Assembly: GCA_964188305.1 (NCBI GenBank)
Contig: OZ076888.1
From: Podarcis bocagei
Lineage: Eukaryota
Length of the DNA stretch: 64,000 bases
Strand: one strand, 5' to 3'
Both the position numbers and the translations under genes were made by a program. The number at the start of each line of letters is the position of its first letter. Positions within the stretch are counted from its first letter, which is position 1. Shown here one piece after another: positions 4,243 through 42,290 of the stretch. The notes under the pieces were generated by a model. The model was given only the letters and a program-made list of their open reading frames with translations. It was not told where the DNA came from and searched no databases.

Positions 4243-4602
4243 AAAGGTAAAGGTACCCCTGCCAGTACGGGCCAGTCGTGTCCGACTCTAGGGTTGTGTG
4301 CCCATCTCACTCAAGAGGCCGGGGGCCAGCGCTGTCCGGAGACACTTCCGGGTCATGTGGCCAGCGTGACAAAGCTGCTCTGGCGAGCCAGCACCAGAGC
4401 AGCACACGGAAACGCCGTTTACCTTCCCGCTATAAAGCGGTACCTATTTATCTACTTGCACCTAGGGGTGCTTTCAAACTGCTAGGTGGGCAGGAGCTGG
4501 GACCGAAAGACGGGAGCTCACCCCGCCGCGGGGATTCGAACCGCCGACCATTCGATCGGCAAGTCCTAGGCGCTGAGGTTTTACCCACAGCGCCACCCGC
4601 GT
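4243..4602 (-). mobile_element. Sauria SINE (Squam1), near full length
   Basis: Minus strand begins ACGCGGGTGGCGCTGTGGGTAAAACC, has B box GGTTCGAATCC and the body AAGTGCAAGTAGATAAATAGGTACC, and ends in an (ACCTTT)n tail. Confidence 0.95.
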
Positions 4603-6324
4603 TAAACTTTAGCAATCACCCAGTTTGCCGGCATTTCAGTAATTAGTTATAGGATTCTAATGACTGCAAGATGGGATCAAGTTGTGATCTAACTTTCTTT
4701 TTAGCACAGGTTAAATACACCCACAGACACGTATCTTATAAGCTTTCACAGAAAGTAAGAGATGGGTAGGAGACTCTGCTTAACAAACAGTCACAGAGTT
4801 AAGTGAACTCCCAGTTTTATGAAATAAATGAAACAGTATTTCAAAATGAAGTGCACACATTTCTTATACTTAATTTAACGTCTCTTAAGAACCTTTCAAT
4901 GATCCCAGTATTCCAGCCCTTCAGCAATCTTGCAATGGAGAAACAGAAGAGTTCACTGAGAAAATATATATATGAGCCAGAGCTCCAAAAGCATAGACCA
5001 GTTTCAAATGACCTTACAGGTCTTATAACAAAATCCACAAAGGTTTCTAGCCCATAGGAGCGTTTCTGTTCATAAGTTTATTGTCCCATCCAAAGGTCTT
5101 GACAACCTTGTAGAAATAGTATTAATAAAGAACATATATCCATAACAGAAACAAACATCCATCATGTAAGAGAAGATACCAGAGACACCAACAAGCTTAA
5201 ATCTAATGTGATTTCAGATTAAACCTCCTAATCACCAAAACAACTTATCCAGCTCCTTTTTCCTCACATCTTTTTAATCACATCTTTTTTCTGTCTCTGC
5301 TATGTAACTGGCACCCTTAAAAAAAACACAGCCAGATTTTTTAAAAGAGAGAAACTCCTAGAAACAGGCTAGAGAGCTGGGAAGCTAATTCAATATATTG
5401 CTAGTTGGCTGAAAAAAAAAAATTGTAATAATTCTGAACTCTTCCTACAACCATTTTTCTTGCTGCCCAAGAAAGCCTCCTTTTATTTGTGTTATTTACT
5501 GATGGAAAAATTTCCAGCCGACAGTCTGAAAATCACTACTCAAAGTGTATTGCTTATGTCACTGGAGATACAGTTCTGAGCTCCCACTTATCTCTTCTTG
5601 GTTTCATTGCTTCCTTGATGTGCATTTAAACCTGCCCCTGAGTTAGGTTACTGTCACTAGTGTTATCTCTGCTTTTTCAATAGCTGTTGTGATATTCTCA
5701 GAGTGCATTGATCACGGACTGTCTGGGCTTGAACGCTGTTACATTAAGACAGATAATGGTCATAATACAGAATAGATCTTATTGCCATAGACATTTCTAT
5801 ACTTTCTCCAGCAGTGCCATGCACACAAGGGGAGGATTCAGAAAGTTCTGCCCATAAAGTGGAGATTATTCCTTAAAGTGAAGAACTACTAAAAGCCATA
5901 GGAGATGAATAATCTTTTAACAAAAAATCAGATTCAAACAATGGATTCAACTAAAAAATGAAACAAAGTTTAATCCCTACCTAAGAAGTCAAGGAAAATT
6001 CAATGACTGAAAACTAGATAATGTCAACATATACCTTGCCTTGCTATCAAACTTATGCATTAAAGTCACAACTGTGAACCTCCTTACAGAATTGGCAAAT
6101 CCTGTTGCCAACAGGATCAGGGGATGGGATTTGCAAGATAATAAAGAGGAATGATGTGTGCAATGCCTAAAGTTGCCACTCTTTAACCTAACAGATACTG
6201 TGCACCTTTCAGCAGAAGAGCTTCAGCTGGTGCAGTTTCAACATCACAGAGGCCCTTTACTAGGAAAACTATATCTGAAGCAGAAATCTGTTGTGTAAGT
6301 AGAACAACAACAGAAGAGAAGGAG

Positions 6325-11883: not shown

Positions 11884-11925
<42 letters not shown>

Positions 11926-13745
11926 TTATTATTTATACCCCGCCCATCTGGCTGGGTTTCCCCAGCCACTCTGGGCGGCTTCCAACTGAATATTAAAAAC
12001 AGTACAGCTTCAAACATTAAAAACTTCCCTAAAGAGGGCTGCCTTCAGATGCCTTTTAAAAGTAAAATAGTTGTTTATTGCTTTGACATCTGCTGGGAGG
12101 GCGTTCCACAGGGCAGGCGCCACTACCGAGAAGGCCCTCTTCCTGGTTCCCTGTAACCTCACTTCTCGCAATGAGGGAACCGCCAGGAGGCCCTCGGTGC
12201 TGGATCTCAGTGTCCGGGCTGAACGATGGGGGTGGAGACGCTCCTTCAGGTATACTGGACCGAGGCCATTTAGGGCTTTAAAGGTCAGCACCAACATTTT
12301 GAATTGTGGTCGGAAACGTACTGGGAGCCAATGCAGATCTCTCAGAACCGGTGTTATGTGGTCCCGGCGGCCACTCCCAGTCACCAGTCTAGCTGCCGCA
12401 TTCTGGATTAATTGCAGTTTCCGGGTCACCTTCAAAGGTAGCCCCACGTAGAGCGCGTTGCAGTAGTCCAAGCGGGAGATAACTAGAGCATGCACCACTC
12501 TGGCAAGACAGTCCGCGGGCAGGTAGGGTCTTAGCCTGCGTACCAGGTGGAGCTGGTAGACAGCTGCCCTGGACACAGAATTAACCTGTGCCTCCATGGA
12601 CAGCTGTGAGTCCAAAATGACTCCCAGGCTGCGCACCTGTTCCTTCAGGGGCACAGTTACCGCATTCAGGACCAGGGAATCCCCCACACCCGCCCGCCCC
12701 CTGTCCCCCAAAAACAGTACTTCTGTCTTGTCAGGATTCAACCTCAATCTGTTAGCCGCCATCCATCCTCCAACAGCCTCCAGGCACCCACACAGGACCT
12801 TCACCGCCTTCACTGGTTCTGATTTAAAGGAGAGGTAGAGCTGGGTGTCATCTGCATACTGATGAACACCCAGCCCAAACCCCCTGATGATCTCTCCCAG
12901 CGGCTTCATATATATATTAAAAAGCATGGGGGAGAGGACGGAACCCTGAGGCACCCCACAAGTGAGAGCCCAGGGGTCTGAACACTCATCCCCCACCACC
13001 ACTTTCTGGACACGGCCCAGGAGAAAGGAGCGGAACCACCGTATGACAGTGCCCCCAGCTCCCAGCTCCTCTAGACGGTCCAGAAGGATGTTATGGTCGA
13101 TGGTATCAAAGGCCGCTGAGAGATCCAGCAGAACTAGGAAACAGCTCTCACCTTTGTCCCTAGCTCGCCGGAGATCATCAACCAGTGCAACCAAGGCAGT
13201 TTCAGTCCCATGGTGAGGCCTGAATCCCGATTGGAAGGGATCCAAATGGTCCGCATCCTCCAGGCGTGCTTGGAGTTGTCTGGCAACCACCCGCTCAATC
13301 ACCTTGCTCAAGAATGGTAAATTTGAGACTGGGCGATAGTTGGCCAAATTGGCTGGGTCTAAAGATGTTTTTTTAAGAAGCGGTTTAATGACCGCCTCTT
13401 TCAGTGGGCCTGGGAAGGCTCCCTCACAGAGGGAAGCATTCACCACCCCGCAGAGCCCATCGCCCAGCCCTTCCCGGCTCGCTTTTATCAACCAAGATGG
13501 GCAAGGATCAAGGAGACAGGTGGTCGGTTTCAATTGTCCAAGCAGCCTGTCCACATCCTCGGAGGTAACAGATTGGAATTGATCCCATGTAACAGGACTA
13601 GACAAAACTCTAGCACTCTCCCACCCTGGCCCTGCTCCCACGGTGGAGTCTACCTCCTTCTGAATCTGAGCGACTTTATCTGCAAAAAACTTTGCAAAAG
13701 CATTGCAGGAGATCTTGGGGTCCCTACCAGGCCCCGGTGGGGGGG
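11884..13745 (-). mobile_element. L2-clade non-LTR retrotransposon, 5'-truncated, young
   Basis: Uninterrupted RT frame, short 3'UTR ending in (TTA)14 at 11884-11925, CpG-rich. No TSD seen. Appears inserted in an older hAT-like MITE (about 11707-13841). The 5' boundary is approximate. Confidence 0.92.
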
Positions 13746-13818
13746 ATTTTCGAGGTGGTGTTTGCTGAGACTTTTTGCAAGCAACATAGGAGGGACTGAC
13801 AGGCCCACTGGCAGCCAT
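12010..13818 (-). CDS. L2-clade ORF2 reverse transcriptase and C-terminal domain (endonuclease domain missing); first about 25 codons probably flank-derived
   Basis: Motifs NYRPVSNLPFLSK, QSGFR, LLDLSAAFDTIDH, GVPQGSVLSP, YADDTQLY, RLDYCNALY and HITPVLRDLHWLP, which are typical of L2. Confidence 0.9.
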   Translation of the reverse strand: MAASGPVSPSYVACKKSQQTPPRKSPPPGPGRDPKISCNAFAKFFADKVAQIQKEVDSTVGAGPGWESARVLSSPVTWDQFQSVTSEDVDRLLGQLKPTTCLLDPCPSWLIKASREGLGDGLCGVVNASLCEGAFPGPLKEAVIKPLLKKTSLDPANLANYRPVSNLPFLSKVIERVVARQLQARLEDADHLDPFQSGFRPHHGTETALVALVDDLRRARDKGESCFLVLLDLSAAFDTIDHNILLDRLEELGAGGTVIRWFRSFLLGRVQKVVVGDECSDPWALTCGVPQGSVLSPMLFNIYMKPLGEIIRGFGLGVHQYADDTQLYLSFKSEPVKAVKVLCGCLEAVGGWMAANRLRLNPDKTEVLFLGDRGRAGVGDSLVLNAVTVPLKEQVRSLGVILDSQLSMEAQVNSVSRAAVYQLHLVRRLRPYLPADCLARVVHALVISRLDYCNALYVGLPLKVTRKLQLIQNAAARLVTGSGRRDHITPVLRDLHWLPVRFRPQFKMLVLTFKALNGLGPVYLKERLHPHRSARTLRSSTEGLLAVPSLREVRLQGTRKRAFSVVAPALWNALPADVKAINNYFTFKRHLKAALFREVFNV

Positions 13819-22354: not shown

Positions 22355-23770
22355 ACACCACAGCTCATCCTCTTGGTCACCACCCCAGGACTCACTTGCT
22401 GTTTCCTCCATTTTAAGAAAACTGCCATCGAGGAATACCACCAGATCAGATCCTCTTTGATGCCACCATAAAACCTCATTTCTATCTTCCTGCTTGTCAC
22501 TTGCCCTAGGTACTTGCCCAGTCTCAGGCCTGAGTGCCCAACACTTATCAGTGTTCTTTCAGAGAGGAAATAAAGGTCTCAATTTCAGCACAGTTTTTCT
22601 ACACTTCCTCCCTCAGCTCTGCCCTCTGGCAGTTGGTTGCCCAGGCAACACCGCTATTCCCTGAGGATCAGCATTCCACAGTGCTCTGCTGCCATGCAAA
22701 AGGAGGGCTTGCAAAGTGACACCCCCATCTCCTGTATTGGCTTATTTAGATGGGCAGTTTGCCTGAAGAAAATTGAAGCTCAAGGGAAAGTGCAATTGTC
22801 TCATTTTTTAGAGCTTGAAAGTAGATTGATTGTGAATGCTGATGTTGAGCCAGTAGAATAAAGAATTTGTATAATTTGGCTCTACTGGAGCTAGAATAAA
22901 ATATTGAGGCTGATGGGCAGTTAATGTTGGGAGCTTCTCCTCCTCGTCGTCTCCTCACCCTCACATAACGTTTCATAAGGCAAATAGCAGGCAATGAAGC
23001 ATAATGGGGATGGCAAAACATAACACACAGTGATCTCACTTCTCACATTTTGTTTAACTGAATGTTATGGGGAGTGAGGAAGAGGAAATGTCAAGCCACA
23101 GCTTTTGGCAGAGACCACACGTTGGCCATTCAATCCATTGAAAAAGGACTGTCAAGTGGATATCCTTACATTTGCTCATTCAACACTACCATGGGCACAG
23201 ATTCTTGCTGTGGATTATTTTCACCTTAGTTTTCTTAAACAACAATAACAACTAACTTGCACACTTTATACATAAATAGATAAGTAAATTAATTTGCAAT
23301 ATATGTTATTTACATATTCATTGATGTATAATTGCCACTGTGTTGAAGTTGGCCATTGCTTGACTATATGCACAATGGCTGAGAAGTCAATCTCACAGAA
23401 TTCAGTGGGGCTCGCTTCCCATTGTGAATTTCAAAAAGCAATAGAATGCATTGTGTGCATTATTGTTGTTTTCACATGGAGAAATCATTCTTTTCGCATG
23501 GAGATTACCTTGAATGTTATGTTTCAGCTGACACGCACATTGCCATTTTCTGAATAAAATACAAGTTTATTAAATAAATTGTTGAAATGGGGGCGGGACT
23601 TATTTGCAGTTCAGTGGCAGGAGTAATTCATGTAATCCAAGATACAAAATGCAAAATATCAGCAGGGTGCTAAACAATCTCTCCCTGACGCCTGAGTGAG
23701 GGAAATGAAACGTTATGTCAAGTTAATATTGAACTCTGAAGTCAAGCTTATTGAGATAGGCTGCAGCCCT

Positions 23771-24912
23771 GGGGGGCCCACTAGGGGGCGCATTGGAAGA
23801 TGGCTGACAATAACATCTCTCCAACCCACACGAGGTAATTTGGAGGCTATGATGGGGGTAATTAGCCTCCTTAACCCCCCCCAGGATTGTGGGGGGGGCG
23901 GCCCTTGCCTGCTGTGCCCTACACCACCCCCGAATTTGTGGGGGTGGGGGCACTAGGCACAAAGCCCTCCTGTGGGATTTCGGCACTCCTGAACGCCGTC
24001 CCTGATTCGCGCCACTAGATGCAGAACTTCAAAGGAAACAATTTGGATGAAAGGAATGCACATATTTCAAGAAAGAAGGGGGAGTAAAGACTGCTAACAG
24101 AAGAGATCTCTGACAAAACAAGATAAGAATAAAACATGAGAAGATAAGCCAAGACAAGGTACGGCAAATGACTGATGGGGGAGGGGGAAAAAACCTCTCC
24201 CTTCTTTCCCTATGTGATTAAACAAGAATCCCCTCCCCTCACGAGTCAGAAATGTCGTTTTAAGGACTTAAGCTGTGGATTTAAGGCTGTGTGGAGATAA
24301 ACTTTCGAACCAAAGCATGTTTTAAGAAGAGCGAGGAATGTATAAGAGCTTGGGAATGACGCAGTTAAAAATGCCGTCGCCATATTGGGAAGTTCTGTTG
24401 GAGGTCTTGAGTCTGGGAGGAGAAAGAGAGAAATAGAGCTGTTTATATATTGTGGGTTAAACTCCTCAGTGGGACTCAGAGCGACAGTTTTACGAGACTA
24501 TGATGGAAAGAGTGATGTTATCTATGAAGGAGACGATATATGGAAACCATCTCGATTTGAGGATTGGAAGAACGGAAAATTCACACAGGACTATTATTAC
24601 TATTGGTTTTATCGGCTTAAGGAGACTATCAGAAGAGATCATAAAGAAAAAAGAGAAAATATATGAACAAGATGTGATGTGGAAACAGCAAGATAAGATG
24701 GGATAGAACTATGAACTTTGTTTGGACTGATTTGGACTGATTGGGACATTAACGCAGCAGCAAGATGATGATGATCAGAATCCTCCTTCGGATCTTGAAA
24801 TATGGGTCCCCCCAACAAAATTTAAAATTCGGCTTTGTAATTCAGAATTTATGTGATATGATTTAATTTGATGTGATTGGCCAGTTAATAAAATTATTTT
24901 TTTTAAAAAAAA
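23771..24912 (+). mobile_element. non-autonomous, apparently full-length retroposon mobilised by L1-type machinery
   Basis: 18-bp TSD GAGATAGGCTGCAGCCCT at 23753-23770 and 24913-24930; G-run start; GC/CpG-rich 5' region; AATAAA plus A-tail; no long ORF. Confidence 0.85.
23778..23804 (+). promoter_or_regulatory. CTCF core motif and YY1 motif at the retroposon 5' end (motif match only)
   Basis: CCACTAGGGGGCGC (23778-23791) and AAGATGGC (23797-23804). Confidence 0.55.
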
Positions 24913-27900
24913 GAGATAGGCTGCAGCCCTAACCCAATTTAAAATGGGAGTAAACCTCACTGAATTCAGTAGGACTTCCTTCTGGGTAGTCAAGGTTAGA
25001 ACCATAGATCACTTTGTGATGGGGCACTAAACACTACGCCTCTGAAAATTCTTTAGTGTTGAAAGGGAGCACACAGAAGGTAGTTGATTTGTAAACATCT
25101 GTTGATGGCTGGGATATGTGTGTCTATTGTACACTGTGAGATACGTAACCCCACCCCACTCCCAAAAAACAACTTATATTACTGCATCAGTAGCTGATGA
25201 AATAGAAGAAAGACATGCAAATAAACCAATTGCTGCAGAATGGAAAATAGCAGATGAAAGCGTGAATGACTTTTGGAAAAGATTGAGTCTTGTTTATTCA
25301 TACATCCATTGCATCGTATCTCATGTGAACCACGTTACCCAAGATCTTAGATTGTGGACGAGCTCTGATGGGAGAGTAATGGTTTCTACCAGTTAGTTTT
25401 GTGCTTCTATATGAAAGACATATGTTAAGAATGTTACAGAAAATGCTTTGATATAATTTATTCTTTCACTAAGCCTTTGAATATTGTAGTTAAAATGGGT
25501 CAAGAGACAGAAAATAAGGTGACCCCAATGAAAGAGAAACTGTGTAATATTTTTCTCAGGGACTCAAGGATGTGCTGGTAAACTTGACAGGTATTTTTCT
25601 CATTTTAGACCTGGCTATATGTAATTCTAGGCTTTACTTGTAGGGATAATATAAATGATGATTCAACGGTAGATACAATATGTATAATTCTAGGGAATTA
25701 AAGTATATTCGTGCTATACTAATAAGGATACCTTCTCTAAAGTACAGTAGCTTATAAAGTAAAGTACCTTTTTTCTTTTTTCTTTTTTGATGAAACATTC
25801 TTTCCAGCCTGGCCAGTAGAAGGGAAAAGAATTATTACTTTAATTAGGTTGAATCTCTCTTAATTCTTATTTCTTTTACAGGAATCTTAATCCTTTCTCT
25901 TGTAACTCTTTATTTCAAGATAGCACAAGCTGTTAAAACCTAATTATTTCTCTGTATCATTACTTTAATTTCAATTTATTCAGAAACCCTTTTAAAATGC
26001 TGTGTAATTTGAGCATATTGTATTTTCTATTTTATGATTTTCAGTAAAACTTGTTAAAATTCATTTCTGACCTTGCTTTATTTCCTGGGGAAGTATTTAG
26101 CTCTCTGTTCTTCTAACAATAAGAAAGTTCTGGAGACAAACAGTGCTGTGGAAATTAAAAGTGCTCATGGGGGCTGCTTTGATAGCTAGGGCTCCTTAGT
26201 CACTATAACTTGGTGTTACCACAAGCCTCTCCTCTGTGCTTACTCTGACCTCTAGTATCAATGATATATTCTAGAGTCTACAGAGGCATTTTGGAACATT
26301 CATCCTCCTTATGAGCAGACACAGTAGCCCATCTGGTCTGTGAGCTGAACATCACCATTCCTGTCTCTGCTCATCCACAGTATCTTTCTACCATTTGAGT
26401 TTGTGCCTACTATTCCTTGCACACAGAAAAATCTGCTTGGGGCTGATCCCATTCTGGAATTGCTTTTCCAGAACCAGAGACATGGTTTTCCAGAACCTCA
26501 TCCATGGGAAACATGGGAGGCAAAAGATTTTTCATGCATGCAATGACAGAACTTACTAGATTCACAAATGCTTGCTAAAACGTTTTAAACTCATATAACT
26601 ATTGTGTTATCCAGCATCACAGACTAGTATACTGAATGCTGTGCATGGTACATATTCATCATATGAAACTTCAGATATCTTTGAGGCTCAGGTACCAAAT
26701 CTGAATTTATTCATTTACTGGATTTAAAAATATAATAATATTCTCATTCATTAACCCAAAAAATGGGGGGGGGGAGCATAGAGCCAAAACATACCATTTT
26801 TCCAGAGGCATGTGGAATGAAAAGTCTTCATGTAATTAGAAGGCATATTATGTTGTAGAATGCCAATTTAAATTTCAACTGTATGGATTAAAACAAAATA
26901 CTGACAAGTGTCACTCGCCCTGACTGAATACCTTTCACAAACTTAAGCAGATGGCAACACTCTGGATTGTAAGTACAGTAAGCCCGCAACCTACACTCAC
27001 TTTAGTTATGCCAACGCTACCTTACGTGGGCAACCAACCAACCAACCAATAAATAACGAAGAAAAATGCAGGGGAAATAAGGGGAAATCAACAACAGAAG
27101 GGGACTGGAGAGCAGGAAACAACAGTTGGCAATCCCATCAGCCACTGCACTCATTTTCCACCAATGGTTGGTGTGGTAGAGGTAAAAGTGAGTAGAGCAA
27201 TATATGAGCATTCTACTTTTGTGTAGTAGGCTAGTTTTTACATCCACTCACAAAACTGAGTGTTTCCAATAGGTGCTACATGCTGACTCCTAGTGCCAGT
27301 GAAGCCTCTGACATCAGTTGACTTCAGGCCTCTTCAGCATGTGGAAGAGCTAAAATATGGCAGTTTCTCAGTCCCTCCTCTTGTACTGCAGTGATAATTA
27401 TAAACAGCTCAAGGATCGCATGCAGGTAGCAGAAAGATTAAGCTGCCAGTGACACAACAGATGTGAGAAACGCACAGGTTTTCACTGAACGTCCGTGAGC
27501 ATGCTCCAAGTAAAGTTAAATTCAAAGAAGCTTCCATACATCAACTAATATCGACAGGGTTATGAATGGCGATTATGAGACTCAATGTCACAGGACAGTT
27601 TAAGTGACAGGTAAAAAAGTAAGGTGAAAAGATCTGTGCTATATTTTTTAACCAAAAATGTGCAATCTCATTTATAAAGATGAGCAAGAAGTATTTCCAG
27701 CTGTAAATATATTCATTGAATACATCTTGATTTAGAACTTGAACTGCTTGGATTGCTATGTGTCAGCTCCTTGCTGTCAATCACACAGCTTTATAGAACC
27801 GTGCTATATGATTGATACAGCTTGATGCAACATATCAAAACTGTACAAAATAAATAAAACTGGGGCGCATATGTTAAAACTGAAAGAGGTGAAACATGCT

Positions 27901-28424
27901 TATTTTATAAAGTGAAGTGAACTTTTTTTCATTTAACAATAGGAAGGTTGAAGAACTAAAAGCATGAAGATGAATTTGGAGCCAAGGGAGTCTGTAGGAA
28001 TTACTGTGGCTGATTAACCTGAAAGAGGGCTATAAGCAACAAAGAATATAGACTGCATTATGGAACAGTAACTCCTCAGTCAAATATAGCCTCCAAGAAG
28101 CCACCAGGCCCAGGAGCAGCCTACTTAGAAGCATCTGGTGAGGAAACTATGTATTCCAGAGCAAAATTTACAAGCAGGCTACTTTGAAGGGTGTCATAAT
28201 CTCGTTGCTGGGCAACAACTTGCAGAGTTCAGTGGAGGGAGAGGCCAGCCAACCAGGAGTGTCTCTGAGGTGTACTTGCCTGGAGGCAGAGTCATCATCC
28301 AAAGTCAGATCCAGTCTTAGGGTCGGGCACACAGCAATCTGCATGGTCAGATGGTCCAGGGGTCAGGAAATCCGATGATCAGAGGGTCAAGGGTCAAGAC
28401 TAGCAGGAAGCTAGTCAAAATAAG

Positions 28425-28619
28425 GTCAAAATAAAGACAATTCAAGACAAAGACAAATTTTTGGGAAGATACCAGGAGGACCTGCAGAAGGGGACTGTAA
28501 ACCCAATTGCAGAACAAAGGAGAGTATTAGATATTTTGAATCTTTCGTTTGGACAAAAACCACCACCATCAGAAGAAGAGCAACAACTTGGAGCTGTTGG
28601 AGGAGTCTCTGAAAAATAA
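28425..28619 (+). pseudogene. 3' remnant of L1 ORF1 (no start codon)
   Basis: Open frame VKIKTIQDKDKFLGRYQEDLQKG...GAVGGVSEK-stop, ending 4 nt before the ORF2 ATG; assigned by position. Confidence 0.65.
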
Positions 28620-28623
28620 CAAG

Positions 28624-31600
28624 ATGGCGCTGCAATTCCTAAGCTGGAATTGTAATGGGCTCAATGGGCCTTTGAGAAGAAGACAAGTATTTCACATTTT
28701 GAACAGAGAACAACTGGATTTGATATGTCTACAAGAAACCCACATAACCAGAGCTCACAGGAGATTACTTACAAATAAAAGACTAGGACAAGAATTTATC
28801 TCATCAGATAAAGTAAAAAAAAGAGGAGTTGTGATATATGTGAAAGAGAAATGGACTCCAAAAATGATGTTTAAAGATGAACAAGGGAGATATCTGGCAG
28901 TAGAGATACAAGTACAAGGAGAAAAACTTTTAGTTGTTGGAATCTATGCACCAAATGAAGGCAAATCTGACTTCTTTAAGAGACTTCATGAAACCCTGAC
29001 GGACTATTTGGATTATAATATGATAATCATGGGAGACATGAATGGTGTGGTCTCCACTAACATGGACAAGGCACAAAGACTAACAGTTACTAAGGAAGGG
29101 AGACTTCCTAGGACCTTTTTTGAAATGACGGAAAACATGGACTTGATAGACATATGGAGAACAAGGAACCCTCTGGAGAGAGAGGGAACCTTTTTCTCCC
29201 AAGCAATGATGACCTGGACCAGAATTGACCAAATTTGGATTACTAGTGGTATGGCTCCATTGATTAAGAAGGTGGAAATCTGCCCAAAAACTTGCTCCGA
29301 CCATAACGCCGTGAAGATGGAGATGAAACTTACAACAACTGGTCAATTTAGATGGAGAATGAATGACACCCTCTTTCGAGATAAGGAGATCCTTATGAAG
29401 GCCCAAAAAACTTTAAAAGACTATTTTGAAATAAATTTGAGGGCCGATGTGGAGAAAAGAGTGATCTGGGACGCAAGTAAAGCGGTGATGCGAGGTTTCT
29501 TGATTCAACAAAACTCAATAAAGAGGAAAAAACAAAATGAGAAAAAAGAAAAGATTTTGGAAAAGATAAAGGAAGGAGAGAAAAAATTAAGAACAAAACC
29601 AAAGTCCCAGGAGATTTTAAGAGAGATTAAGTTATATCAAACACAATATATGGAATTGATGAACCAAGAGATTGAATGGAAGATAAAGCAAATGAAACAA
29701 AAGACATTCGAATCAGCAAATAAATGTGGCAAACTTCTGGCATGGCAACTGAAGAAAAGGCAGAAATTAAATACAGTTACAAGCCTAGAAGTGGATGGGA
29801 AAAATATATCTAAACCCAATGAAATCAGAAATTGCTTTTTGAGTTATTTCAAAAAACTTTATACTCAAGGCCCGCGAAACGAAGAAGATATAGATAAATT
29901 CCTTGATAAATATGGATTACAAAAAATCTCTCATCAAAGTAAGATGGATCTGAACCAGAGAATAACAGAACAAGAGATAGAGGCTGCCATTCAGAATATG
30001 CAACTGGGCAAATCTCCAGGACCAGATGGACTGACTTCCAGATACTACAAATCGCTGAAGGAATGGTTGATTCAACCACTAAAAGAAGTTTGCAATGAGA
30101 TCCTTGAGGGAAAAAAGGCACCTGAATCGTGGAAAGAAGCATATATTTCACTCATACCAAAGACAGAGACTGAAAAGACCCAATTGAAGAACTACCGCCC
30201 AATATCACTACTTAATGTGGATTACAAAATTTTTGCAGACATTTTGGCAAAAAGATTTAAAAAAGTGCTGATGGAGAAGATTCATAAGGACCAAGCAGGC
30301 TTTCTCCCAAAAAGACACCTAGCAGACAATGTAAGGAATATAATAGATATTTTGGAAAAGCTAGAGGTGAATATAAACACTAAAGCAGTATTGATTTTTG
30401 TGGACGCGGAGAAAGCCTTTGACAATATTTCTTGGAGTTTTATGATAAAGAATCTTCATGGGATGGGGGTAGGCCAAGGTTTTGAGAATGGTATGGAGGC
30501 AATATACTCTGAACAAAAAGCTAAGTTGATTGTAAATAATGTAATAACTGAGGAACTTAAGATAGAAAAAGGAACACGACAGGGGTGCCCAATTTCTCCA
30601 TTACTCTTCATTTCAGTTTTGGAGGTGTTGCTGAATATGATTAGAAATGACCAGCAGGTTAAGGGAGTGCAGGTCGGAGCTAAACAGTATAAGTTAAGAG
30701 CATTTGCAGATGACCTAGTATTGACTTTGCAAGAGCCAAACACTAGTACGAAAAGGGTCTTAGAAATAATCCAACTGTTTGGCCAGGTGGCTGGATTTAA
30801 GTTGAATAAACAAAAAACCAAAGTTCTAGGAAAAAACTTAACAGATATGGAAAAAGAGGAATTCCAAGAGGAGACAGGGTTGATGGTGGTTAAGAAGGTT
30901 AAATACCTAGGGGTTTATTTGACATCCAAAAATGTGAATTTGTACAAGGATAACTATGAAAAATGTTGGTCAGAGATTAAAAAAGATCTAGAAATATGGT
31001 CAAATTTGAAATTGTCAATGTTAGGCCGAATTGCAGTGATTAAAATGAATGTATTGCCTAGAATGTTATTTTTGTTCCAGACCTTGCAGATTCTGGATAA
31101 GATGGAATGTTTCAAGAGGTGGCAGAAAGATATTTCGAAATTTGTCTGGCAGGGCAAAAAGCCCAGAATCAAATTTAAAATATTGACAGATGCTAAAGAA
31201 AGAGGGGGTTTTGCCTTGCCGGACTTGAAATTGTACTATGAGGCAGCAGCATTTTGCTGGCTGAAAGAATGGATGCTCCTCGAAAACACAGACATCTTAG
31301 ATCTGGAAGGCTTCAACAATGCTTTTGGTTGGCATGCATATCTATGGTATGATAAAATCAATAGTGCCTTTAAAAATCATATTGTTAGAAAAGCATTGTT
31401 CAATGTTTGGATAAGATATAAAGATCTGTTGGAAAACAAAACCCCTAGATGGGTGTCACCAGTGGAGGCCAAGGCAGTGAAGAAACTCAATATGGAGGTC
31501 GGATGGCCGAAGTATTGGGAAATTTTGGAACAGGATGGAGATAAGTTCAAATTACAAAGTCATGAGAAATTGAAACATAAGGTACAAAATTGGTTTCAAT

Positions 31601-32355
31601 ATCATCAAATAATGGAATTTTTCAAACAGGATAGGAAAATTGGCTTCCAGATGGAAAAATCAAAACTAGAAACTGAATTGTTAGAACCCAGTACTAAGAA
31701 TTTATCTAGAATGTATAACTTGTTGCTGAAATGGAATACACAGGATGAAACAGTCAAATCAGCTATGATTAAGTGGGCACAGGATGTTGGTCATAACATT
31801 ATGTCAGCTGACTGGGAAGGGTTATGGAACACCGCTATCAAATTTACGGCATGTAATGCCTTAAAGGAAAATATTATGAAAATGGTATACAGGTGGTACA
31901 TGACCCCAGTCAAGCTGGCAAAAATTTATCATTTGCCCGATAACAAATGTTGGAAATGTAAAGAGACTGAAGGTACCTTCTACCACCTTTGGTGGACATG
32001 CCCGAAGATTAAGGCTTTCTGGGAAATGATCTATAATGAAATGAAAAAGGTACTTAAATGTACCTTTCCTAAAAAACCAGAGGCCTTTCTCCTGGGCATT
32101 GTCGGCCAATTGGTGTCAAAGAGGGATAGAACTTTCTTTATGTACGCTACAACAGCAGCAAGAATACTTATCGCGAAGTATTGGAAGACACAAGATCTAC
32201 CCACTCTGGAAGAATGGCAGATGAAAGTGATGGACTATATGACATTGGCCGAGATGACAGGCAGAATCCGCGATCAACGAATAGAGACGGTGGAAGAAGA
32301 ATGGAGAAAATTTAAAAGCTATCTTAAGGACTACTATAAACTTAATGAATGTTAA
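28624..32355 (+). CDS. L1 ORF2p: APE endonuclease, reverse transcriptase and C-terminal CCHC region, 1243 aa
   Basis: SWNCNGL, LQETH, YAPN, GDMN, RIDQI, SDH (APE); KSPGPDG, YRPISLLNVDYKI, DAEKAFD, GTRQGCPISP, FADD, YLG (RT); CWKC-x7-HLWWTC. Confidence 0.97.
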   Translation: MALQFLSWNCNGLNGPLRRRQVFHILNREQLDLICLQETHITRAHRRLLTNKRLGQEFISSDKVKKRGVVIYVKEKWTPKMMFKDEQGRYLAVEIQVQGEKLLVVGIYAPNEGKSDFFKRLHETLTDYLDYNMIIMGDMNGVVSTNMDKAQRLTVTKEGRLPRTFFEMTENMDLIDIWRTRNPLEREGTFFSQAMMTWTRIDQIWITSGMAPLIKKVEICPKTCSDHNAVKMEMKLTTTGQFRWRMNDTLFRDKEILMKAQKTLKDYFEINLRADVEKRVIWDASKAVMRGFLIQQNSIKRKKQNEKKEKILEKIKEGEKKLRTKPKSQEILREIKLYQTQYMELMNQEIEWKIKQMKQKTFESANKCGKLLAWQLKKRQKLNTVTSLEVDGKNISKPNEIRNCFLSYFKKLYTQGPRNEEDIDKFLDKYGLQKISHQSKMDLNQRITEQEIEAAIQNMQLGKSPGPDGLTSRYYKSLKEWLIQPLKEVCNEILEGKKAPESWKEAYISLIPKTETEKTQLKNYRPISLLNVDYKIFADILAKRFKKVLMEKIHKDQAGFLPKRHLADNVRNIIDILEKLEVNINTKAVLIFVDAEKAFDNISWSFMIKNLHGMGVGQGFENGMEAIYSEQKAKLIVNNVITEELKIEKGTRQGCPISPLLFISVLEVLLNMIRNDQQVKGVQVGAKQYKLRAFADDLVLTLQEPNTSTKRVLEIIQLFGQVAGFKLNKQKTKVLGKNLTDMEKEEFQEETGLMVVKKVKYLGVYLTSKNVNLYKDNYEKCWSEIKKDLEIWSNLKLSMLGRIAVIKMNVLPRMLFLFQTLQILDKMECFKRWQKDISKFVWQGKKPRIKFKILTDAKERGGFALPDLKLYYEAAAFCWLKEWMLLENTDILDLEGFNNAFGWHAYLWYDKINSAFKNHIVRKALFNVWIRYKDLLENKTPRWVSPVEAKAVKKLNMEVGWPKYWEILEQDGDKFKLQSHEKLKHKVQNWFQYHQIMEFFKQDRKIGFQMEKSKLETELLEPSTKNLSRMYNLLLKWNTQDETVKSAMIKWAQDVGHNIMSADWEGLWNTAIKFTACNALKENIMKMVYRWYMTPVKLAKIYHLPDNKCWKCKETEGTFYHLWWTCPKIKAFWEMIYNEMKKVLKCTFPKKPEAFLLGIVGQLVSKRDRTFFMYATTAARILIAKYWKTQDLPTLEEWQMKVMDYMTLAEMTGRIRDQRIETVEEEWRKFKSYLKDYYKLNEC

Positions 32356-34401
32356 AGTGTTCTGGTTTTCAGAAACAAAGGGATACAGTGATATAAGGTC
32401 AGAATATAGAGAGGACTACGATGACAGAGGCGGAGAGTAACAATAGGGAGTTGCTATAAAATTATGGACACTGGGATGCAGAAAGGGGGGGTATGGGGAA
32501 GTCCGAGAAAAGAGGTTTATGAAAATAGGTGATGAAACTATACATGTATGTTTGTTCTTTTAAGTGTTTGTTTGTTGTTTAAAACTTTGTAAAACCAATA
32601 AAAATTTTTATAAAAAAAAAAAAGACTAGCAGGAAGCAGCAAGGTAGGACCAGGAAATACAAGCACTGTTACTGGCATCTGACTGCTGCTGGAAGCTCTG
32701 CTTAAGAAGGCTGTAGCCAGCTGGTCCTTATCCGTGTCTTCTCCTCAGTGTCCTTGAAGGCTGATCAGTTGCAGGTGGGAGTCACTCCACCTTCTCCCCC
32801 TTCAGACAGGCAAAGCTGACTCCTGGCCCCATGACAGAGGGCTAGAGGTTGAGATGTTGGTCCATCTCACACTTCTCAAAGTGGCCTCCAGGAACATGAA
32901 TGGTCAACCAGAGGACTATACCATATGAAAGAGAGAATGCATTGGACCCAGAGAATGCCCACAGAAGGTGGCAGGGGGAAGCCAACTTTCCTTATTCCCA
33001 TCTATGCCCCCTGATCCTGCCCCTTTACAAAGTCTCTCCCAAATGTTAGAAGACCTTGCAGAATAGGGAGGCATGCAGCACAGAGGTTGAGAGAAAAGGG
33101 GATTCCTGAAAACCAGGCAATGCCAGCTTCTGCAAGCAGGGACGCTGGTCACAGAAGGTGCCTCTGCCTGATTTGGGGGGAGGGATATTGTGTGTCGACA
33201 GGAATGTTTGTCCCGATGCGTATCAGCTGGTATCTGCAACAACGGCAAAAGCAACAAATCTGCTTCCACATGTGAGTGCCATTTGCCAGAGCGGGCATCT
33301 GTCTACAGCATTTCATATGCTTCAACTTCATGGTGAGTGTGGGTGCCTTTCAAGTCATATCTCCTACAATGCAGGTTCCTTGCTGTTAATGTATTCAGAT
33401 TTTAAAGACCCTTACATATGAAGTGTAACTCTGTGCAAACTCAAAGCCAGGTAGGAGTGGTCCCAGAGGAGTGAGGAAAGTCACATGTGTGCAATTTAGT
33501 TTCCAACTTCAAAGCAGGTTCCAATTCTTAAACTTCATAGAGGGCTTAATTTGCGAGGAAAAACCTGAGGCACCAGATTTATATGAGCTGATTATAAATT
33601 GCCCTTAATCTTATGCACATATATACTGGCAACACAGTGCTTGGAAGAGAAAAACAACAGTGCTGTCTGTGGCTATAAACTCAAGATGGGCAGACGAGGA
33701 AAGAAAATGATATTGAGTGACCACCTGGTAATTTCACTTCAACAGTAGTTTATTTGGTCTTTCATTTATTTGCAATTTGCCAACAAAATACTTCCCCCAA
33801 AGGCCCAAAATGTGCATCAGTTTTTAAAACAGACTTTTTATATATTTTAACTCCCCTTTAGCTGGCCAGGCTCAAAAACAAACACACAATTATTTTTTTA
33901 AATGCCCTTAGATATTTTGTGTGTGTGTGGTTTCTCTGCTTTGTTTGTGATTAATCTACTGTTCATCCATCCCGGTTCAGAAAGTTTTCATTGCTGCTTT
34001 GTTTGCAACTATTACATTTTGCATTGTTCTCTCATAATATCTTTGGTTTAATATTTGGCCTTATAGTTCTGAACCAGCCCTGCAGGATGGGCAGATTAAG
34101 ACTAGGATGGTCTGTCCTTTAGGCTAATGGGTTCCAACTGATTATTGAATGCCTTTGGGTTTGTTTTCCAGTAGGCAGAGCATTGGAAAGAAGCATTCTA
34201 TTGCAGCTTGGCTTTGATATGTGTGCTGCACAAAACTGTTTGTCTGGTTTGCTAGTGTGTCCATGGGCCCAAAAAGGTTGGTAACCCCTGAGTTTATCAG
34301 TGCTACATTGCCTTTCACCTATCATACAAACAGATGGAGCTCATTTTATCCCATTTGTTTCCTCCACAGACATGTTTACATACAAGTACATGAGCACAGG
34401 C

Positions 34402-39341: not shown

Positions 39342-41840
39342 TCTCAAGGGCCACAAAATGAAGAGGATATAGATAAATTCCTTAATAAATATGGATTACA
39401 AAAAATCTCTCATCAAAGCAAGGTGGATTTAAACCAGAGAATAACAGAACAAGAGATAGAGGGTGCCATTCAAGACATGCAACTGGGCAAATCTCCAGGG
39501 CCAGATGGACTGACTTCCAGATATTACAAATCTTTGAAGGAGTGGTTGGTTTATCCGTTAAAGGAAGTCTGTAACGAGATTTTAGAGGGGAAAAAGGCAC
39601 CAGAATCGTGGAAAGAAGCGTATATTTCACTCATACCAAAGACAGAGACTGAAAAGACTCAACTTAAGAACTACCGCCCAATATCATTACTTAATGTGGA
39701 TTACAAAATTTTTGCACACATTTTGGCAAAAAGATTTAAAAGAGTGTTGATGGAGAAGATTCATAGGGATCAAGCAGGCTTTCTCCCAAAAAGGCACCTA
39801 TCAGACAATGTAAGGAATATAATAGACATTTTGGAATTGCTAGAGGTGAAAATAAACACTAAAGCAGTGCTGATCTTTGTGGACGCGGAGAAAGCCTTTG
39901 ACAATATTTCTTGGAGTTTTATGAAAAAGAATCTTCATGGGATGGGGGTAGGCCAAGGATTTGAGAACGGTATGGGTGCGATATACTCTGAACAAAAAGC
40001 CAAGCTGATTGTAAATAATGTGATAACTGAGGAACTTAAGATAGAAAAAGGAACACGACAGGGATGCCCAATTTCCCCATTGCTCTTTATTTCTGTCCTG
40101 CAGGTGTTGCTGAATATGATTAGAAATGACCAGCAGGTTAAAGGTGTACAGGTCGGAGCTAAACATTATAAGTTAAGGGCATTCGCAGATGACTTAGTAT
40201 TGACCCTACAAGAGCCAAACACTAGTACGAGAAGGGTGTTGGAGATAATTCAACAATTTGGCCAGGTAGCTGGATTCAAACTGAACAAACAAAAAACTAA
40301 AGTCTTAGGAAAAAATTTGACAGTCATGGAGAAGGAGAAATTTCAAGAAGAGACAGGTTTGACAGTGGTCAAGAAGGTGAAATACCGAGGGGTTTATTTG
40401 ACATCTAAAAATTTGAATTTGTATAAGGACAACTATGAAAAATGCTGGTTAGAAATTAAAAAAGATCTGGAAATATGGTCAAATTTGAAACTGTCAATGT
40501 TAGGCCGAATTGCAGTTATTAAGATGAATGTATTGCCTAGAATGTTATTTTTGTTTCAAACCTTACAGATTCTTGACAAGATGGACTGTTTCAAGAGGTG
40601 GCAGAAGGATATTTCGAAATTTGTCTGGCAGGGCAAAAAGCCCAGAATTAAATTCAAGATACTGACAGATGCCAAAGAAAGAGGGGGATTTGCCCTGCCG
40701 GATTTAAAATTGTACTATGAAGCAGCTGCGTTTTGCTGGCTGAAAGAGTGGATGCTCCTCGAGAACACAGACATGCTGGATTTGGAAGGGTTTAATAATG
40801 CATTTGGTTGGCATGCATATTTATGGTATGATAAAATCAAGGTGCATAGGGCCTTTAAAAACCATATTGTCAGAAAAGCATTGTTTAATGTTTGGATAAG
40901 ATACAAAGATTTGTTGGAAAACAAAACCCCTAGATGGTTGTCACCCTTGGAGGCTAAGGCATTGAAGAAACTCAATATGGAGGCCGGATGGCCAAAGTAT
41001 TGGGAAATTCTGGAACAGGATGGAGATAAATTGAAATTACAGAGTCATGAGAAATTGAAATCTAAATTACAAGACTGGCTTCAATATTTCCAAATAATGG
41101 AAGTTTTTAAACAGGACAGGAAAATTGGCTTTCAGGTGGAAAAATCAAAATTAGAGACTGAACTGTTAGAATCCAATACTAAGAACTTGTCAAGAATGTA
41201 TAATTTGCTGCTGAAATGGAACACACAAGACGAAACAGTTAAATCAGCTATGATTAAGTGGGCACAGGACATTGGTCATAACATTATGTTTGCTGACTGG
41301 GAATGGTTGTGGAACACCGGTATCAAATTTACGGCATGTAATGCCTTAAAGGAAAATATTATGAAAATGATTTACAGGTGGTACATGACCCCAGTCAAGC
41401 TAGCAAAAATTTACCATTTGCCTGATAATAAGTGTTGGAAATGTAAAGAAACTGAAGGTACTTTCTATCACCTTTGGTGGACATGCCCGAAGATTAAGGC
41501 TTTCTGGGAAATGATATATAATGAAATGAAAAAGGTACTTAAATGCACTTTCCCTAAAAAACCAGAGGCCTTTCTCTTGGGCATTGTCAGCCAATTGGTG
41601 TCAAAGAAGGACAGAACTTTCTTTATGTATGCTACAACAGCAGCAAGAATACTCATCGCAAAGTATTGGAAGACACAAGATCTACCCACCCTGGAAGAAT
41701 GGCAGATGAAAGTGATGGACTATATGACATTAGCCGAGATGACCGGCAGAATCCGCGACCAGGGAAAGGAGACGGCGGAAGAAGAATGGAAGAAATTTAA
41801 AATCTACCTTAAGGACTACTATAAACTTGCTGAATGTTAG
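39342..41840 (+). pseudogene. truncated L1 ORF2 (RT and C-terminal region, still open, no endonuclease domain)
   Basis: The frame is open from the junction to TAG; RT motifs present, but YLG is changed to YRG. Confidence 0.9.
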
Positions 41841-42110
41841 AATGTCGAGGTTTTGAGTAAGAAAGGGTTACAGCGATACAAGACTAGACTAAAGGAAAGA
41901 TTAAGAGGACAGAGGACTGACAGAAATATTTAGAGTTGCTAAAAACTTTTGGACATTGGGATGCAGAAAGGGGAGGTATGGGGGAGTCTGAGAAACATGG
42001 TTTACGGGGGAAAAAAGGTTATGAAACTATACGTGTGTGTATGTCTTTTTATATGTTTGTATTGTTTTAAAAACTTTGTAAAATCAATAAAAAAATTTAT
42101 ATATAAAAAA
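39342..42110 (+). mobile_element. L1-clade LINE, 5'-truncated within ORF2
   Basis: 16-bp TSD AGAATAGCCTCATCAT at 39326-39341 and 42111-42126; collinear with 29862-32621. Confidence 0.97.
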
Positions 42111-42290
42111 AGAATAGCCTCATCATGTACTGCAGTTTCTGGAGACCACTGTGGTTAGCCCTGTGAGCAATTCCCTCTCGGCCTTCAATTCTTCCTCCAA
42201 GCCCAAGGCTCCATCCCCCAAGGTCATGATGCTGCTTAAGTAATTTGCCTTTCCTTGTGCATTGTTTGATGCTCTCTGTGCATAGATATG

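What the first reader, a model, noticed from the sequence alone, without database searches (positions are those of the whole stretch)
23753..24930. 1142-bp non-coding L1-dependent retroposon with a CTCF + YY1 head
Seen: a perfect 18-bp TSD; the element starts GGGGGG, then CCACTAGGGGGCGC (CTCF core) and AAGATGGC (YY1). A GC-rich region of about 250 bp follows with a second CTCF-like CCACTAGATG near 24012, then a purine-rich body with no ORF over 93 aa. The AATAAA/T-rich/poly(A) end resembles the tails of the two L1s here. No Pol III A/B box and no RT. Established: mammalian L1 5' ends begin with a G-run and a YY1 site that positions an internal Pol II promoter. Inference: a full-length non-autonomous, Pol II-driven parasite of lizard L1 (HAL1-like or a deletion derivative) that could spread CTCF sites through the genome. 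This is my best candidate for an undescribed family.
Basis: partly seen in the sequence, partly recalled or inferred. Interest (0 to 1): 0.75.

Follow-up and report, generated by a model that had tools for sequence, protein, structure and literature searches.

The report
Young non-coding L1-mobilised retroposon copy
A 1.14-kb stretch of non-coding DNA was recently copied into this lizard chromosome by the L1 jumping-gene machinery and carries a perfect CTCF-binding motif at its start, but whether it belongs to a self-propagating repeat family could not be checked with the tools available.

Summary
Window 23771-24912 (1142 bp) is flanked by a perfect 18-bp target-site duplication. It ends in AATAAA, a T-rich stretch and A8, and starts with G6. 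Positions 8-21 are the only perfect CTCF-core match in 64 kb (0.02 expected). It has no coding capacity: the longest open frame equals the shuffle mean. It has no RNA-family or tRNA match, no A/B boxes, and four internal T4 runs. Two 5'-truncated L1s nearby have the same insertion hallmarks, and one keeps an intact ORF2 that is 95% identical to Podarcis muralis proteins. L1-mediated retroposition of a polyadenylated non-coding RNA is therefore well supported.

Not supported:
- Any L1 ancestry (HAL1-like or a deletion derivative). There is no similarity to L1 UTRs, ORF1 or ORF2 from six lizard L1 copies, and no match to the published Anolis L1 5' termini.
- The second CTCF-like site and the YY1 8-mer, which both occur at chance frequency.

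Not testable here: copy number. No Podarcis DNA beyond the window was reachable.

The scan found this before on other DNA. First readers noted look-alike 1.18-kb elements (s1-354287, s1-354232) and a 1.24-kb one (s1-341803) elsewhere in this genome. These are unverified leads that favour a family. Most likely it is a new member of a known kind, of moderate interest.

The parts
23753..23770 (+). 5' copy of the 18-bp target-site duplication
   Evidence: Identical to 24913-24930. Only two occurrences in the window, and not extendable.
23771..24912 (+). Retroposed insert, 1142 bp, non-coding
   Evidence: Bounded by the TSD. The longest open frame, 106 codons, equals the mean of Markov-1 shuffles. 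No Pfam hit at E<0.1, no Rfam hit above chance, no tRNA.
23771..23776 (+). G6 run at the 5' terminus
   Evidence: Read directly. This fits a capped Pol II transcript copied to its 5' end (inference). Mammalian L1s also start with G2-6 (PMC5381506).
23778..23791 (+). Perfect CTCF core-consensus match, CCACTAGGGGGCGC
   Evidence: The only 0-mismatch match to CCASYAGRKGGCRS in 64 kb on both strands, against 0.02 expected. The consensus was taken from general knowledge. Binding is untested.
23797..23804 (+). YY1-like box AAGATGGC, which also contains the first ATG (a 12-codon upstream ORF)
   Evidence: Present but at chance frequency in the window. It has 2 mismatches to the mammalian L1 12-mer CAAGATGGCGGA.
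23771..24020 (+). GC-rich head (GC 0.60, CpG o/e 0.39)
   Evidence: The head folds better than shuffles (z = -3.0).
23869..23954 (+). Two tandem ~49-bp units, each a C-run/G-run hairpin
   Evidence: Direct repeat D1, 73% identity, spacing 49. Two 9-bp C:G stems appear in the minimum-energy fold.
24012..24025 (+). 'Second CTCF-like' site; judged to be chance
   Evidence: It has 3 mismatches to the 14-mer, and 104 sites of that quality occur in the window.
24021..24886 (+). Purine-rich body (60% purine, GC 0.38)
   Evidence: Contains four internal T4 runs and bypassed AATAAA/ATTAAA signals at element positions 358 and 447.
24887..24892 (+). Polyadenylation signal AATAAA
   Evidence: Lies 12 nt upstream of the A-tail.
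24893..24904 (+). A/T-only spacer ending in T8
   Evidence: An A/T-only spacer with a shorter or interrupted T-tract lies at the same place in the two L1 tails.
24905..24912 (+). A8 tail
24913..24930 (+). 3' copy of the target-site duplication
28412..32623 (+). Comparator and candidate mobilising lineage: 5'-truncated L1 with an intact ORF2 and a 14-16-bp TSD
   Evidence: ORF2 is 1268 codons with EN and RT domains and is 95% identical to Podarcis muralis proteins. TSD shown, tail.
39342..42111 (+). Comparator: second 5'-truncated L1 of the same lineage, with a 15-bp TSD
   Evidence: 89% nucleotide identity to the first L1. TSD shown, tail.

Best explanation
A ~1.14-kb non-coding, capped and polyadenylated RNA, most probably a Pol II transcript, was reverse-transcribed into this site by L1 ORF2p through target-primed reverse transcription. 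The event is recent. The copy looks complete at both ends.

Most likely it is one member of a small, uniform family of non-autonomous retroposons in this Podarcis-type lacertid genome. It would be mobilised in trans through its poly(A) end by the L1 lineage that also made the two neighbouring L1 inserts.

Its first 35 nt carry a G-run, a consensus CTCF core and a YY1-like box. If that head acts as a promoter lying downstream of the start site, daughter copies can be transcribed again, and each copy places a potential CTCF site in new DNA.

Shown: the insertion event, its hallmarks, the lack of coding capacity, and the motif match.
Inferred: Pol II origin, trans-mobilisation by this L1 lineage, family status, promoter activity and CTCF binding.
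For: - Perfect 18-bp TSD, unique in the window.
- AATAAA, A/T spacer and A8 tail.
- The tail pattern AATAAA + [AT]5-16 + A>=7 occurs only three times in 64 kb (0 expected). Those three sites are this element and the two L1s, and all three have perfect 14-18-bp TSDs.
- The insertion sites are pyrimidine|purine: ATT|GAGA here, and TC|AAGA or TCAA|GA at L1a, where the tail's A-run hides the exact nick.
- A neighbouring L1 keeps an intact EN+RT ORF2 that is 95% identical to Podarcis muralis proteins, so the machinery is recent.
- Non-coding: the longest open frame equals the shuffle mean; there is no Pfam hit and no homologue. HMMER against 1.84 billion proteins gave only four weak matches to unrelated proteins, one a bacterial-type PPC-domain protein; in the one aligned, the score was the sum of matches to its internal repeats.
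- Not Pol III: four internal T4 runs, no A or B box, no tRNA or Rfam match.
- CpG o/e of 0.39-0.57 in the element against 0.24 in the window fits a young age.
- Leads only, not verified: first readers of other windows of this genome noted 1.18-kb elements with CTCF and YY1 motifs in the first 35 bp (s1-354287, s1-354232) and a 1.24-kb one (s1-341803).
Against: - There is only one copy in the 64-kb window and no 5'-truncated fragments.
- No other copy could be fetched or aligned, so family status, conserved ends and motif conservation are untested.
- The YY1 box is at chance frequency.
- The head does not resemble any L1 5' end available, so the 'internal promoter' rests on analogy.
- The nick site is only a loose match to TT|AAAA.
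Confidence: 0.6

Rival explanations
1. It is a one-off, or few-off, processed retrocopy of a host gene transcript, such as a lncRNA or a short-ORF or UTR-rich mRNA. L1 copied it by accident, and the copies have no capacity to propagate. The CTCF and YY1 motifs are simply the promoter-proximal part of the parent gene's first exon.
For: - It has all the hallmarks of a processed pseudogene: TSD, poly(A) signal and tail, and a 5' G-run.
- It shows no similarity to L1.
- It is single in the window.
- YY1-type boxes just downstream of the start site that overlap an ATG are common in housekeeping genes (general knowledge).
Against: - There is no ORF, although the copy is young enough to have kept one.
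- Unverified scan notes describe at least two or three more elements of the same length with the same motifs in the first 35 bp in about 46 Mb of scanned windows. That would extrapolate to roughly a hundred copies, which is unusual for a retrocopied lncRNA.
Confidence: 0.25
2. It is an internally deleted L1 (5'UTR joined to 3'UTR) or a HAL1-like half-L1 from an L1 lineage not represented in the window.
For: - The G-run plus AAGATGGC start recalls the mammalian L1 terminus G2-6...CAAGATGGCGGA (PMC5381506).
- The tail architecture is the same as that of the two L1s.
- Lizards carry many divergent L1 lineages (PMC5381506; the ~53% identity group), so the right comparator may be missing.
- Scan notes describe other RT-less L1-type elements in this genome.
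Against: - No nucleotide similarity to the L1 UTRs in the window or to four other lizard L1 loci.
- blastx against ORF2 and two lizard ORF1 proteins gives nothing below E = 0.8.
- No Pfam L1 ORF1 domain.
- The Anolis L1 5' termini GACTTCCGGTGN8ATGGCG and GGGNGCTGCGCATGC are absent from the 5' end.
Confidence: 0.1
3. It is not an insertion at all. The 18-bp repeat would be a chance or recombination-derived direct repeat around ordinary intergenic DNA.
For: None beyond the formal possibility.
Against: - An exact 18-mer recurring once, placed exactly after an AATAAA/A-tail and exactly before a G-run, is not expected by chance in 64 kb.
- The composition changes sharply at both junctions.
Confidence: 0.01

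Closest known systems
Processed pseudogenes and retrocopies of Pol II transcripts made by L1
   Same: TSD of 14-18 bp, poly(A) signal and tail, a complete 5' end with extra G, and no sequence shared with L1. Mobilisation through the poly(A) tail in trans.
   Different: There is no recognisable parent ORF. If the scan notes hold, it is multi-copy with a uniform length, and that is family behaviour rather than a one-off retrocopy.
SVA (hominid SINE-VNTR-Alu), a non-coding, Pol II-transcribed, L1-dependent retroposon (PMC3287187)
   Same: Non-autonomous and non-coding, kilobase-sized, polyadenylated with AATAAA, and a GC-rich 5' part that contains a short tandem repeat. L1 hallmarks at the insertion.
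   Different: No sequence relation and no Alu-like or LTR-derived modules. It has only two 49-bp units rather than a VNTR. It is in a reptile.
HAL1 (half-L1) elements
   Same: An RT-less element mobilised by L1.
   Different: HAL1 keeps L1 UTRs and ORF1. This element has neither.
CTCF-motif-bearing retroposons such as rodent B2 SINEs (PMC3368268)
   Same: A consensus CTCF core carried inside a retroposed unit, so each insertion seeds a potential site.
   Different: B2 is a short Pol III SINE present in tens of thousands of copies with demonstrated binding. Here the carrier is a 1.1-kb Pol II-type element, the copy number is unknown, and binding is untested.
5' termini of L1: mammalian G2-6(A/C)G2AGNCAAGATGGCGGA; Anolis clade 1 GACTTCCGGTGN8ATGGCG; Anolis clade 2 GGGNGCTGCGCATGC (PMC5381506)
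   Same: A G-run start and an AAGATGGC box within the first 35 nt, as in mammalian L1.
   Different: The box starts at +27 rather than about +10, with a CTCF core in between. There is no match to either Anolis terminus.

Membership tests
L1-mediated (target-primed) retroposition product | Target-site duplication of roughly 7-20 bp flanking the insert | tested here: met
   Perfect 18-bp TSD, unique in the window.
L1-mediated (target-primed) retroposition product | 3' poly(A) tail preceded by a polyadenylation signal | tested here: met
   AATAAA at 24887, A8 at 24905-24912. The tail is short, like the A7-A12 tails of the two L1s.
L1-mediated (target-primed) retroposition product | Nick site resembling TT|AAAA | tested here: inconclusive
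   The site is ATT|GAGA. It is pyrimidine|purine but only a loose match.
L1-mediated (target-primed) retroposition product | A recently active L1 with EN and RT in the same genome | tested here: met
   Intact 1268-codon ORF2 with both domains and a perfect TSD at 28412-32623. It is 95% identical to a 36-member Podarcis muralis cluster.
Interspersed repeat family (non-autonomous retroposon) | Multiple dispersed copies with shared 5' and 3' ends and different TSDs | not testable with these tools
   No lacertid DNA beyond the window is reachable. Only unverified scan notes exist: s1-354287, s1-354232, s1-341803.
HAL1 / internally deleted L1 | ORF1 or an ORF1 remnant | tested here: not met
   No Pfam hit in eight ORF pieces. 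blastx against two lizard ORF1 proteins gives E >= 0.85. The open-frame length is at chance level.
HAL1 / internally deleted L1 | 5' and/or 3' UTR homologous to an L1 | tested here: not met
   No similarity to six lizard L1 copies or to the Anolis 5' termini. No full-length Podarcis L1 5'UTR was available, so the test is incomplete.
SINE (Pol III) | tRNA-, 7SL- or 5S-derived head with A/B boxes, no internal T4 terminators, and length under about 600 bp | tested here: not met
   No tRNA or Rfam match. The best A and B box matches have 2 mismatches. There are four internal T4 runs and the length is 1142 bp.
Processed pseudogene of a protein-coding gene | Recognisable ORF, or ORF remnant, of a host protein | tested here: not met
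Processed pseudogene / retrocopy of a host transcript | An intron-containing parent locus elsewhere in the genome | not testable with these tools
   No genome or transcriptome of the species is searchable by DNA.
CTCF-site-bearing transposable element | Match to the CTCF core motif | tested here: met
   14/14 match to the consensus, unique in the window, against 0.02 expected.
CTCF-site-bearing transposable element | Motif conserved among copies and occupied by CTCF | not testable with these tools
   This needs the other copies and ChIP or CUT&RUN data.

The most novel reading that the evidence does not exclude
The element is a member of an undescribed, currently active lacertid family of Pol II-transcribed non-coding L1 parasites. 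Its 35-nt head (G-run, CTCF core, YY1 box) would be a self-contained downstream promoter. The family would have seeded on the order of a hundred or more CTCF-occupied sites. That would be the first reptile case of CTCF-site expansion by a retroposon, and one carried by an SVA-like rather than a SINE-like vehicle.
Probability: 0.15. Interest if true: 0.65.

Novelty: new member of a known kind. Interest (0 to 1): 0.4.

Why it matters
Non-mammalian L1s are diverse and active, but almost nothing is described about what they mobilise in trans. A kilobase-sized, non-coding, polyadenylated passenger in a lizard would show that SVA-style parasitism of L1 is not a primate peculiarity. If copies share the 5' end and the CTCF core, the family would be a natural experiment in how retroposons distribute insulator or loop-anchor motifs outside mammals. 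As it stands, the window gives one clean, young insertion, and everything beyond that is still to be tested.

Tried and rejected
- Other copies in the window: blastn with word size 9 finds none. No paralogous empty site either.
- Other copies elsewhere:
  - The scan's sequence and relatives look-ups were blank.
  - Exact look-up of ten element ORFs in the protein collection found none.
  - The word search with the 93-aa ORF found nothing.
  - The Podarcis UniRef L1 protein has no contig on record.
- Collection scans with the head pattern (CTCF core, N4-8, AAGATGGC):
  - Viral contigs gave nothing.
  - Metagenome contigs gave two hits, L001 and L002. These are copies of an unrelated repeat from some other eukaryote, similar only over the searched motif.
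- Rfam at permissive E-value: one sub-threshold snoRNA-like hit at E = 0.65, rejected.
- HMMER of the 106-codon open frame against 1.84 billion representatives: four hits at E = 1e-7 to 1e-4, in unrelated proteins with no shared domain. One is a bacterial-type PPC-domain protein. In the one I aligned, the score adds up matches to its internal repeats. Rejected as chance.
- L1 ancestry: nucleotide and blastx comparisons with L1a, L1b and loci L003-L006 gave nothing. The Varanus L1 locus gave no TSD or ORF1, so its 5' end could not be defined.
- A U8:A8 hairpin or other shared 3' structure in the element and L1 tails: folding energies are no better than shuffles.
- The 201-aa ORF at 57089-57694 (-) was checked as a possible relative of the '201-aa HAL1-like' elements in the scan notes. 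It has no Pfam hit, looks like a chance frame over what reads like SINE-type repeat sequence (by eye, not tested), and shares nothing with the element.
- The last large protein search was not spent. The protein collection showed no Logan contig above 55% identity to this abundant L1, so it evidently lacks Podarcis genomic contigs.
Full report
**What is there**

An exact 18-mer, GAGATAGGCTGCAGCCCT, lies at 23753-23770 and again at 24913-24930. It occurs nowhere else in the window and cannot be extended by a single base on either side. The 1142 bp between the two copies (23771-24912) begin with G6 and end with AATAAA, twelve A/T bases that finish in T8, and then A8. Base composition changes at both junctions.

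A script looked for A-runs followed by a repeat of upstream sequence. It found only three convincing cases in the window:
- this element, with an 18-bp TSD;
- a 5'-truncated L1 at 28412-32623, with a 14-16-bp TSD;
- a second 5'-truncated L1 at 39342-42111, with a 15-bp TSD.

The tail architecture AATAAA + 5-16 A/T bases + at least seven A occurs exactly three times in 64 kb on both strands, at those same three 3' ends. None was expected under a first-order Markov model. I derived that pattern after seeing the tails, so it describes a shared hallmark and is not an independent test. The insertion sites are pyrimidine|purine junctions (ATT|GAGA here; TC|AAGA or TCAA|GA at the first L1, where the tail's A-run hides the exact nick). 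That is a loose fit to the L1 endonuclease preference.

**The machinery**

The first L1 keeps an uninterrupted 1268-codon ORF2 with endonuclease and reverse-transcriptase domains. Its product is 95% identical to a 36-member cluster of Podarcis muralis proteins. A second group of Podarcis L1 proteins lies at about 53% identity, and Anolis L1s at about 42%. The genome is therefore Podarcis or a close lacertid, which agrees with a follow-up note of this scan (s1-345173). It carries a young L1 lineage alongside older divergent ones, as described for lizards (PMC5381506). The two L1 copies are 89% identical to each other. Both are 5'-truncated, so the window holds no L1 5'UTR.

**Coding capacity and RNA class**

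- The longest listed ORF is 93 aa with a TTG start.
- The longest stop-free frame is 106 codons. That is exactly the mean for Markov-1 shuffles of the element, and 40% of shuffles reach it.
- Eight ORF pieces gave no Pfam hit at E < 0.1.
- Ten ORFs are absent from the protein collection, and the word search found no relatives.
- An exhaustive HMMER search gave only four weak matches, to unrelated proteins that share no domain (one a bacterial-type PPC-domain protein); in the one I aligned, the score comes from adding repeated partial matches.
- There is no tRNA and no Rfam family above chance.
- The best A and B box matches have two mismatches, and four T4 runs lie inside the element, so Pol III could not produce a 1.1-kb transcript.

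Together with the used AATAAA signal, this points to a capped, polyadenylated Pol II RNA. That step is inferred.

**The head**

- CCACTAGGGGGCGC at 23778-23791 matches all 14 positions of the CTCF core consensus CCASYAGRKGGCRS, which I took from general knowledge. It is the only such match in the window, against 0.02 expected.
- The AAGATGGC box at 23797 is real, but the 8-mer occurs at chance frequency: 2 hits against 3.4 expected. It has two mismatches to the 12-mer of the mammalian L1 terminus, a quality reached six times in the window.
- The 'second CTCF-like' site at 24012 has three mismatches, and 104 sites of that quality occur in the window. I discard it.
- The first 250 bp are GC-rich (0.60) but hold only nine CpGs (o/e 0.39). 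That is above the window background of 0.24, but it is not a CpG island.
- The head contains two tandem ~49-bp units, each a run of C facing a run of G. It folds better than shuffles, with z = -3.0.

**Is it derived from L1?**

I found no evidence that it is.
- Nucleotide searches with word sizes 7-11 and local alignments with shuffle controls show no similarity to either L1 in the window beyond the AATAAA/A-T/A-run tail.
- blastx against ORF2 gives nothing.
- I fetched four more lizard L1 loci: three Logan contigs related at 50-55% in ORF2, one of them with a 372-aa ORF1 and at least 470 bp of 5'UTR, and one Varanus locus. The element matches none of their UTRs, and blastx against the two ORF1 products among them gives nothing below E = 0.85.
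- The published 5' termini of Anolis L1 are GACTTCCGGTGN8ATGGCG for clade 1 and GGGNGCTGCGCATGC for clade 2 (PMC5381506). Neither is present at the 5' end.
It also shows that lizard L1 heads are different.

No full-length L1 of the Podarcis lineage itself could be obtained, so an origin from an unsampled lineage remains possible, though nothing here supports it.

**Is it a family?**

This is the key question, and I could not answer it by direct test. No collection I could search by DNA holds lacertid genomes, and the Podarcis proteins have no contig on record. The scan's own sequence look-ups were blank.

The scan's word index shows that first readers of other windows of the same genome noted:
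- two elements of 1177-1178 letters 'with CTCF and YY1 motifs in its first 35 bp' (s1-354287, s1-354232);
- a 1.24-kb 'non-coding retroposon with an L1-style YY1 promoter' 24.9 Mb away on the same piece (s1-341803);
- several other size classes of RT-less L1-type retroposons.

These are unverified notes and I treat them as leads. If they describe the same sequence, three or four full-length copies in roughly 46 Mb of scanned windows would extrapolate to about a hundred copies. That would be family behaviour rather than a one-off retrocopy. This is why I put the family reading at about 0.6 and the one-off retrocopy at about 0.25.

**Mechanism**

The most likely sequence of events is as follows.
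1. A source copy is transcribed by Pol II from the G-run.
2. The RNA is cleaved and polyadenylated about 12 nt after AATAAA.
3. ORF2p of the active L1 lineage captures the poly(A) end in trans and nicks a pyrimidine|purine site.
4. ORF2p primes reverse transcription and copies the RNA to its capped end, producing the 18-bp duplication.

For a family to persist, the promoter must travel with the transcript. The only candidates are the motifs just downstream of the start, by analogy with the YY1-positioned L1 promoter (PMC5381506). The CTCF core would then be either part of that promoter or a passenger. Either way, each insertion would deliver a consensus site, as B2 SINEs do in rodents (PMC3368268). 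None of this was tested here.

**A side result**

Scanning metagenome contigs for the composite head motif returned two contigs. Both are copies of one unrelated repeat in some other eukaryote. It has the same CTCF core, a 5-nt spacer and CAAGATGGCCGCC. Similarity to the lizard element is limited to the pattern I searched for, so it says nothing about relatedness.

**Verdict**

This is a real, young, complete L1-mediated insertion of a non-coding polyadenylated RNA with a genuine CTCF consensus at its 5' end. The HAL1 or deletion-derivative reading is not supported. The claims that it is a family, that it drives its own transcription and that it spreads CTCF sites are plausible but untested. 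It is best filed as a new member of a known kind (an L1-dependent non-autonomous retroposon or retrocopy), of moderate interest. It would become more interesting if the whole-genome copy census confirms a uniform family that retains the motif.

Noticed in passing
window 28412-32623 (+): A 5'-truncated L1 with an uninterrupted 1268-codon ORF2 (EN + RT), a 14-16-bp perfect TSD and an A12 tail. It is 95% identical in protein to a Podarcis muralis cluster of 36 members, so this lineage was active recently.
   Followed up: partly
window 39342-42111 (+): A second 5'-truncated L1 of the same lineage, 89% identical in nucleotides to the first. It has an 805-codon open RT part and a 15-bp perfect TSD.
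   Followed up: partly
window 11890-13818 (-): A different LINE fragment: a 602-aa ORF with an RT domain only, ending in a GC-rich stem-like segment followed by an (ATT)n microsatellite tail. This is a different 3'-end type from the L1s.
   Followed up: no
window ~4255-4610 (-): A tRNA-derived SINE-like sequence with a B box, GGTTCGAATCC. ARAGORN does not call it as a tRNA.
   Followed up: no
L001:780-1250 and L002:830-1290 (reverse strand): Two JGI metagenome contigs share a ~450-bp repeat from an unidentified eukaryote. It contains a perfect CTCF core, a 5-nt spacer and CAAGATGGCCGCC, which is the same composite and spacing as the lizard head. Further ATGGCCGCC-type boxes lie downstream. It is unrelated outside the motif.
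   Followed up: partly
window 57089-57694 (-): A 201-aa GTG-start ORF with no Pfam hit, lying over what reads like SINE-type repeat sequence (by eye, not tested). It looks like a chance frame and is not the 201-aa ORF of the HAL1-like elements that other first readers noted in this genome.
   Followed up: partly
L003:1-5512: A Logan contig (ERR14657318) carrying a near-complete lizard-type L1: at least 470 bp of 5'UTR, a 372-aa ORF1, an 86-bp spacer and a 1238-aa ORF2. Its ORF2 is 50% identical to the window's L1 ORF2.
   Followed up: partly
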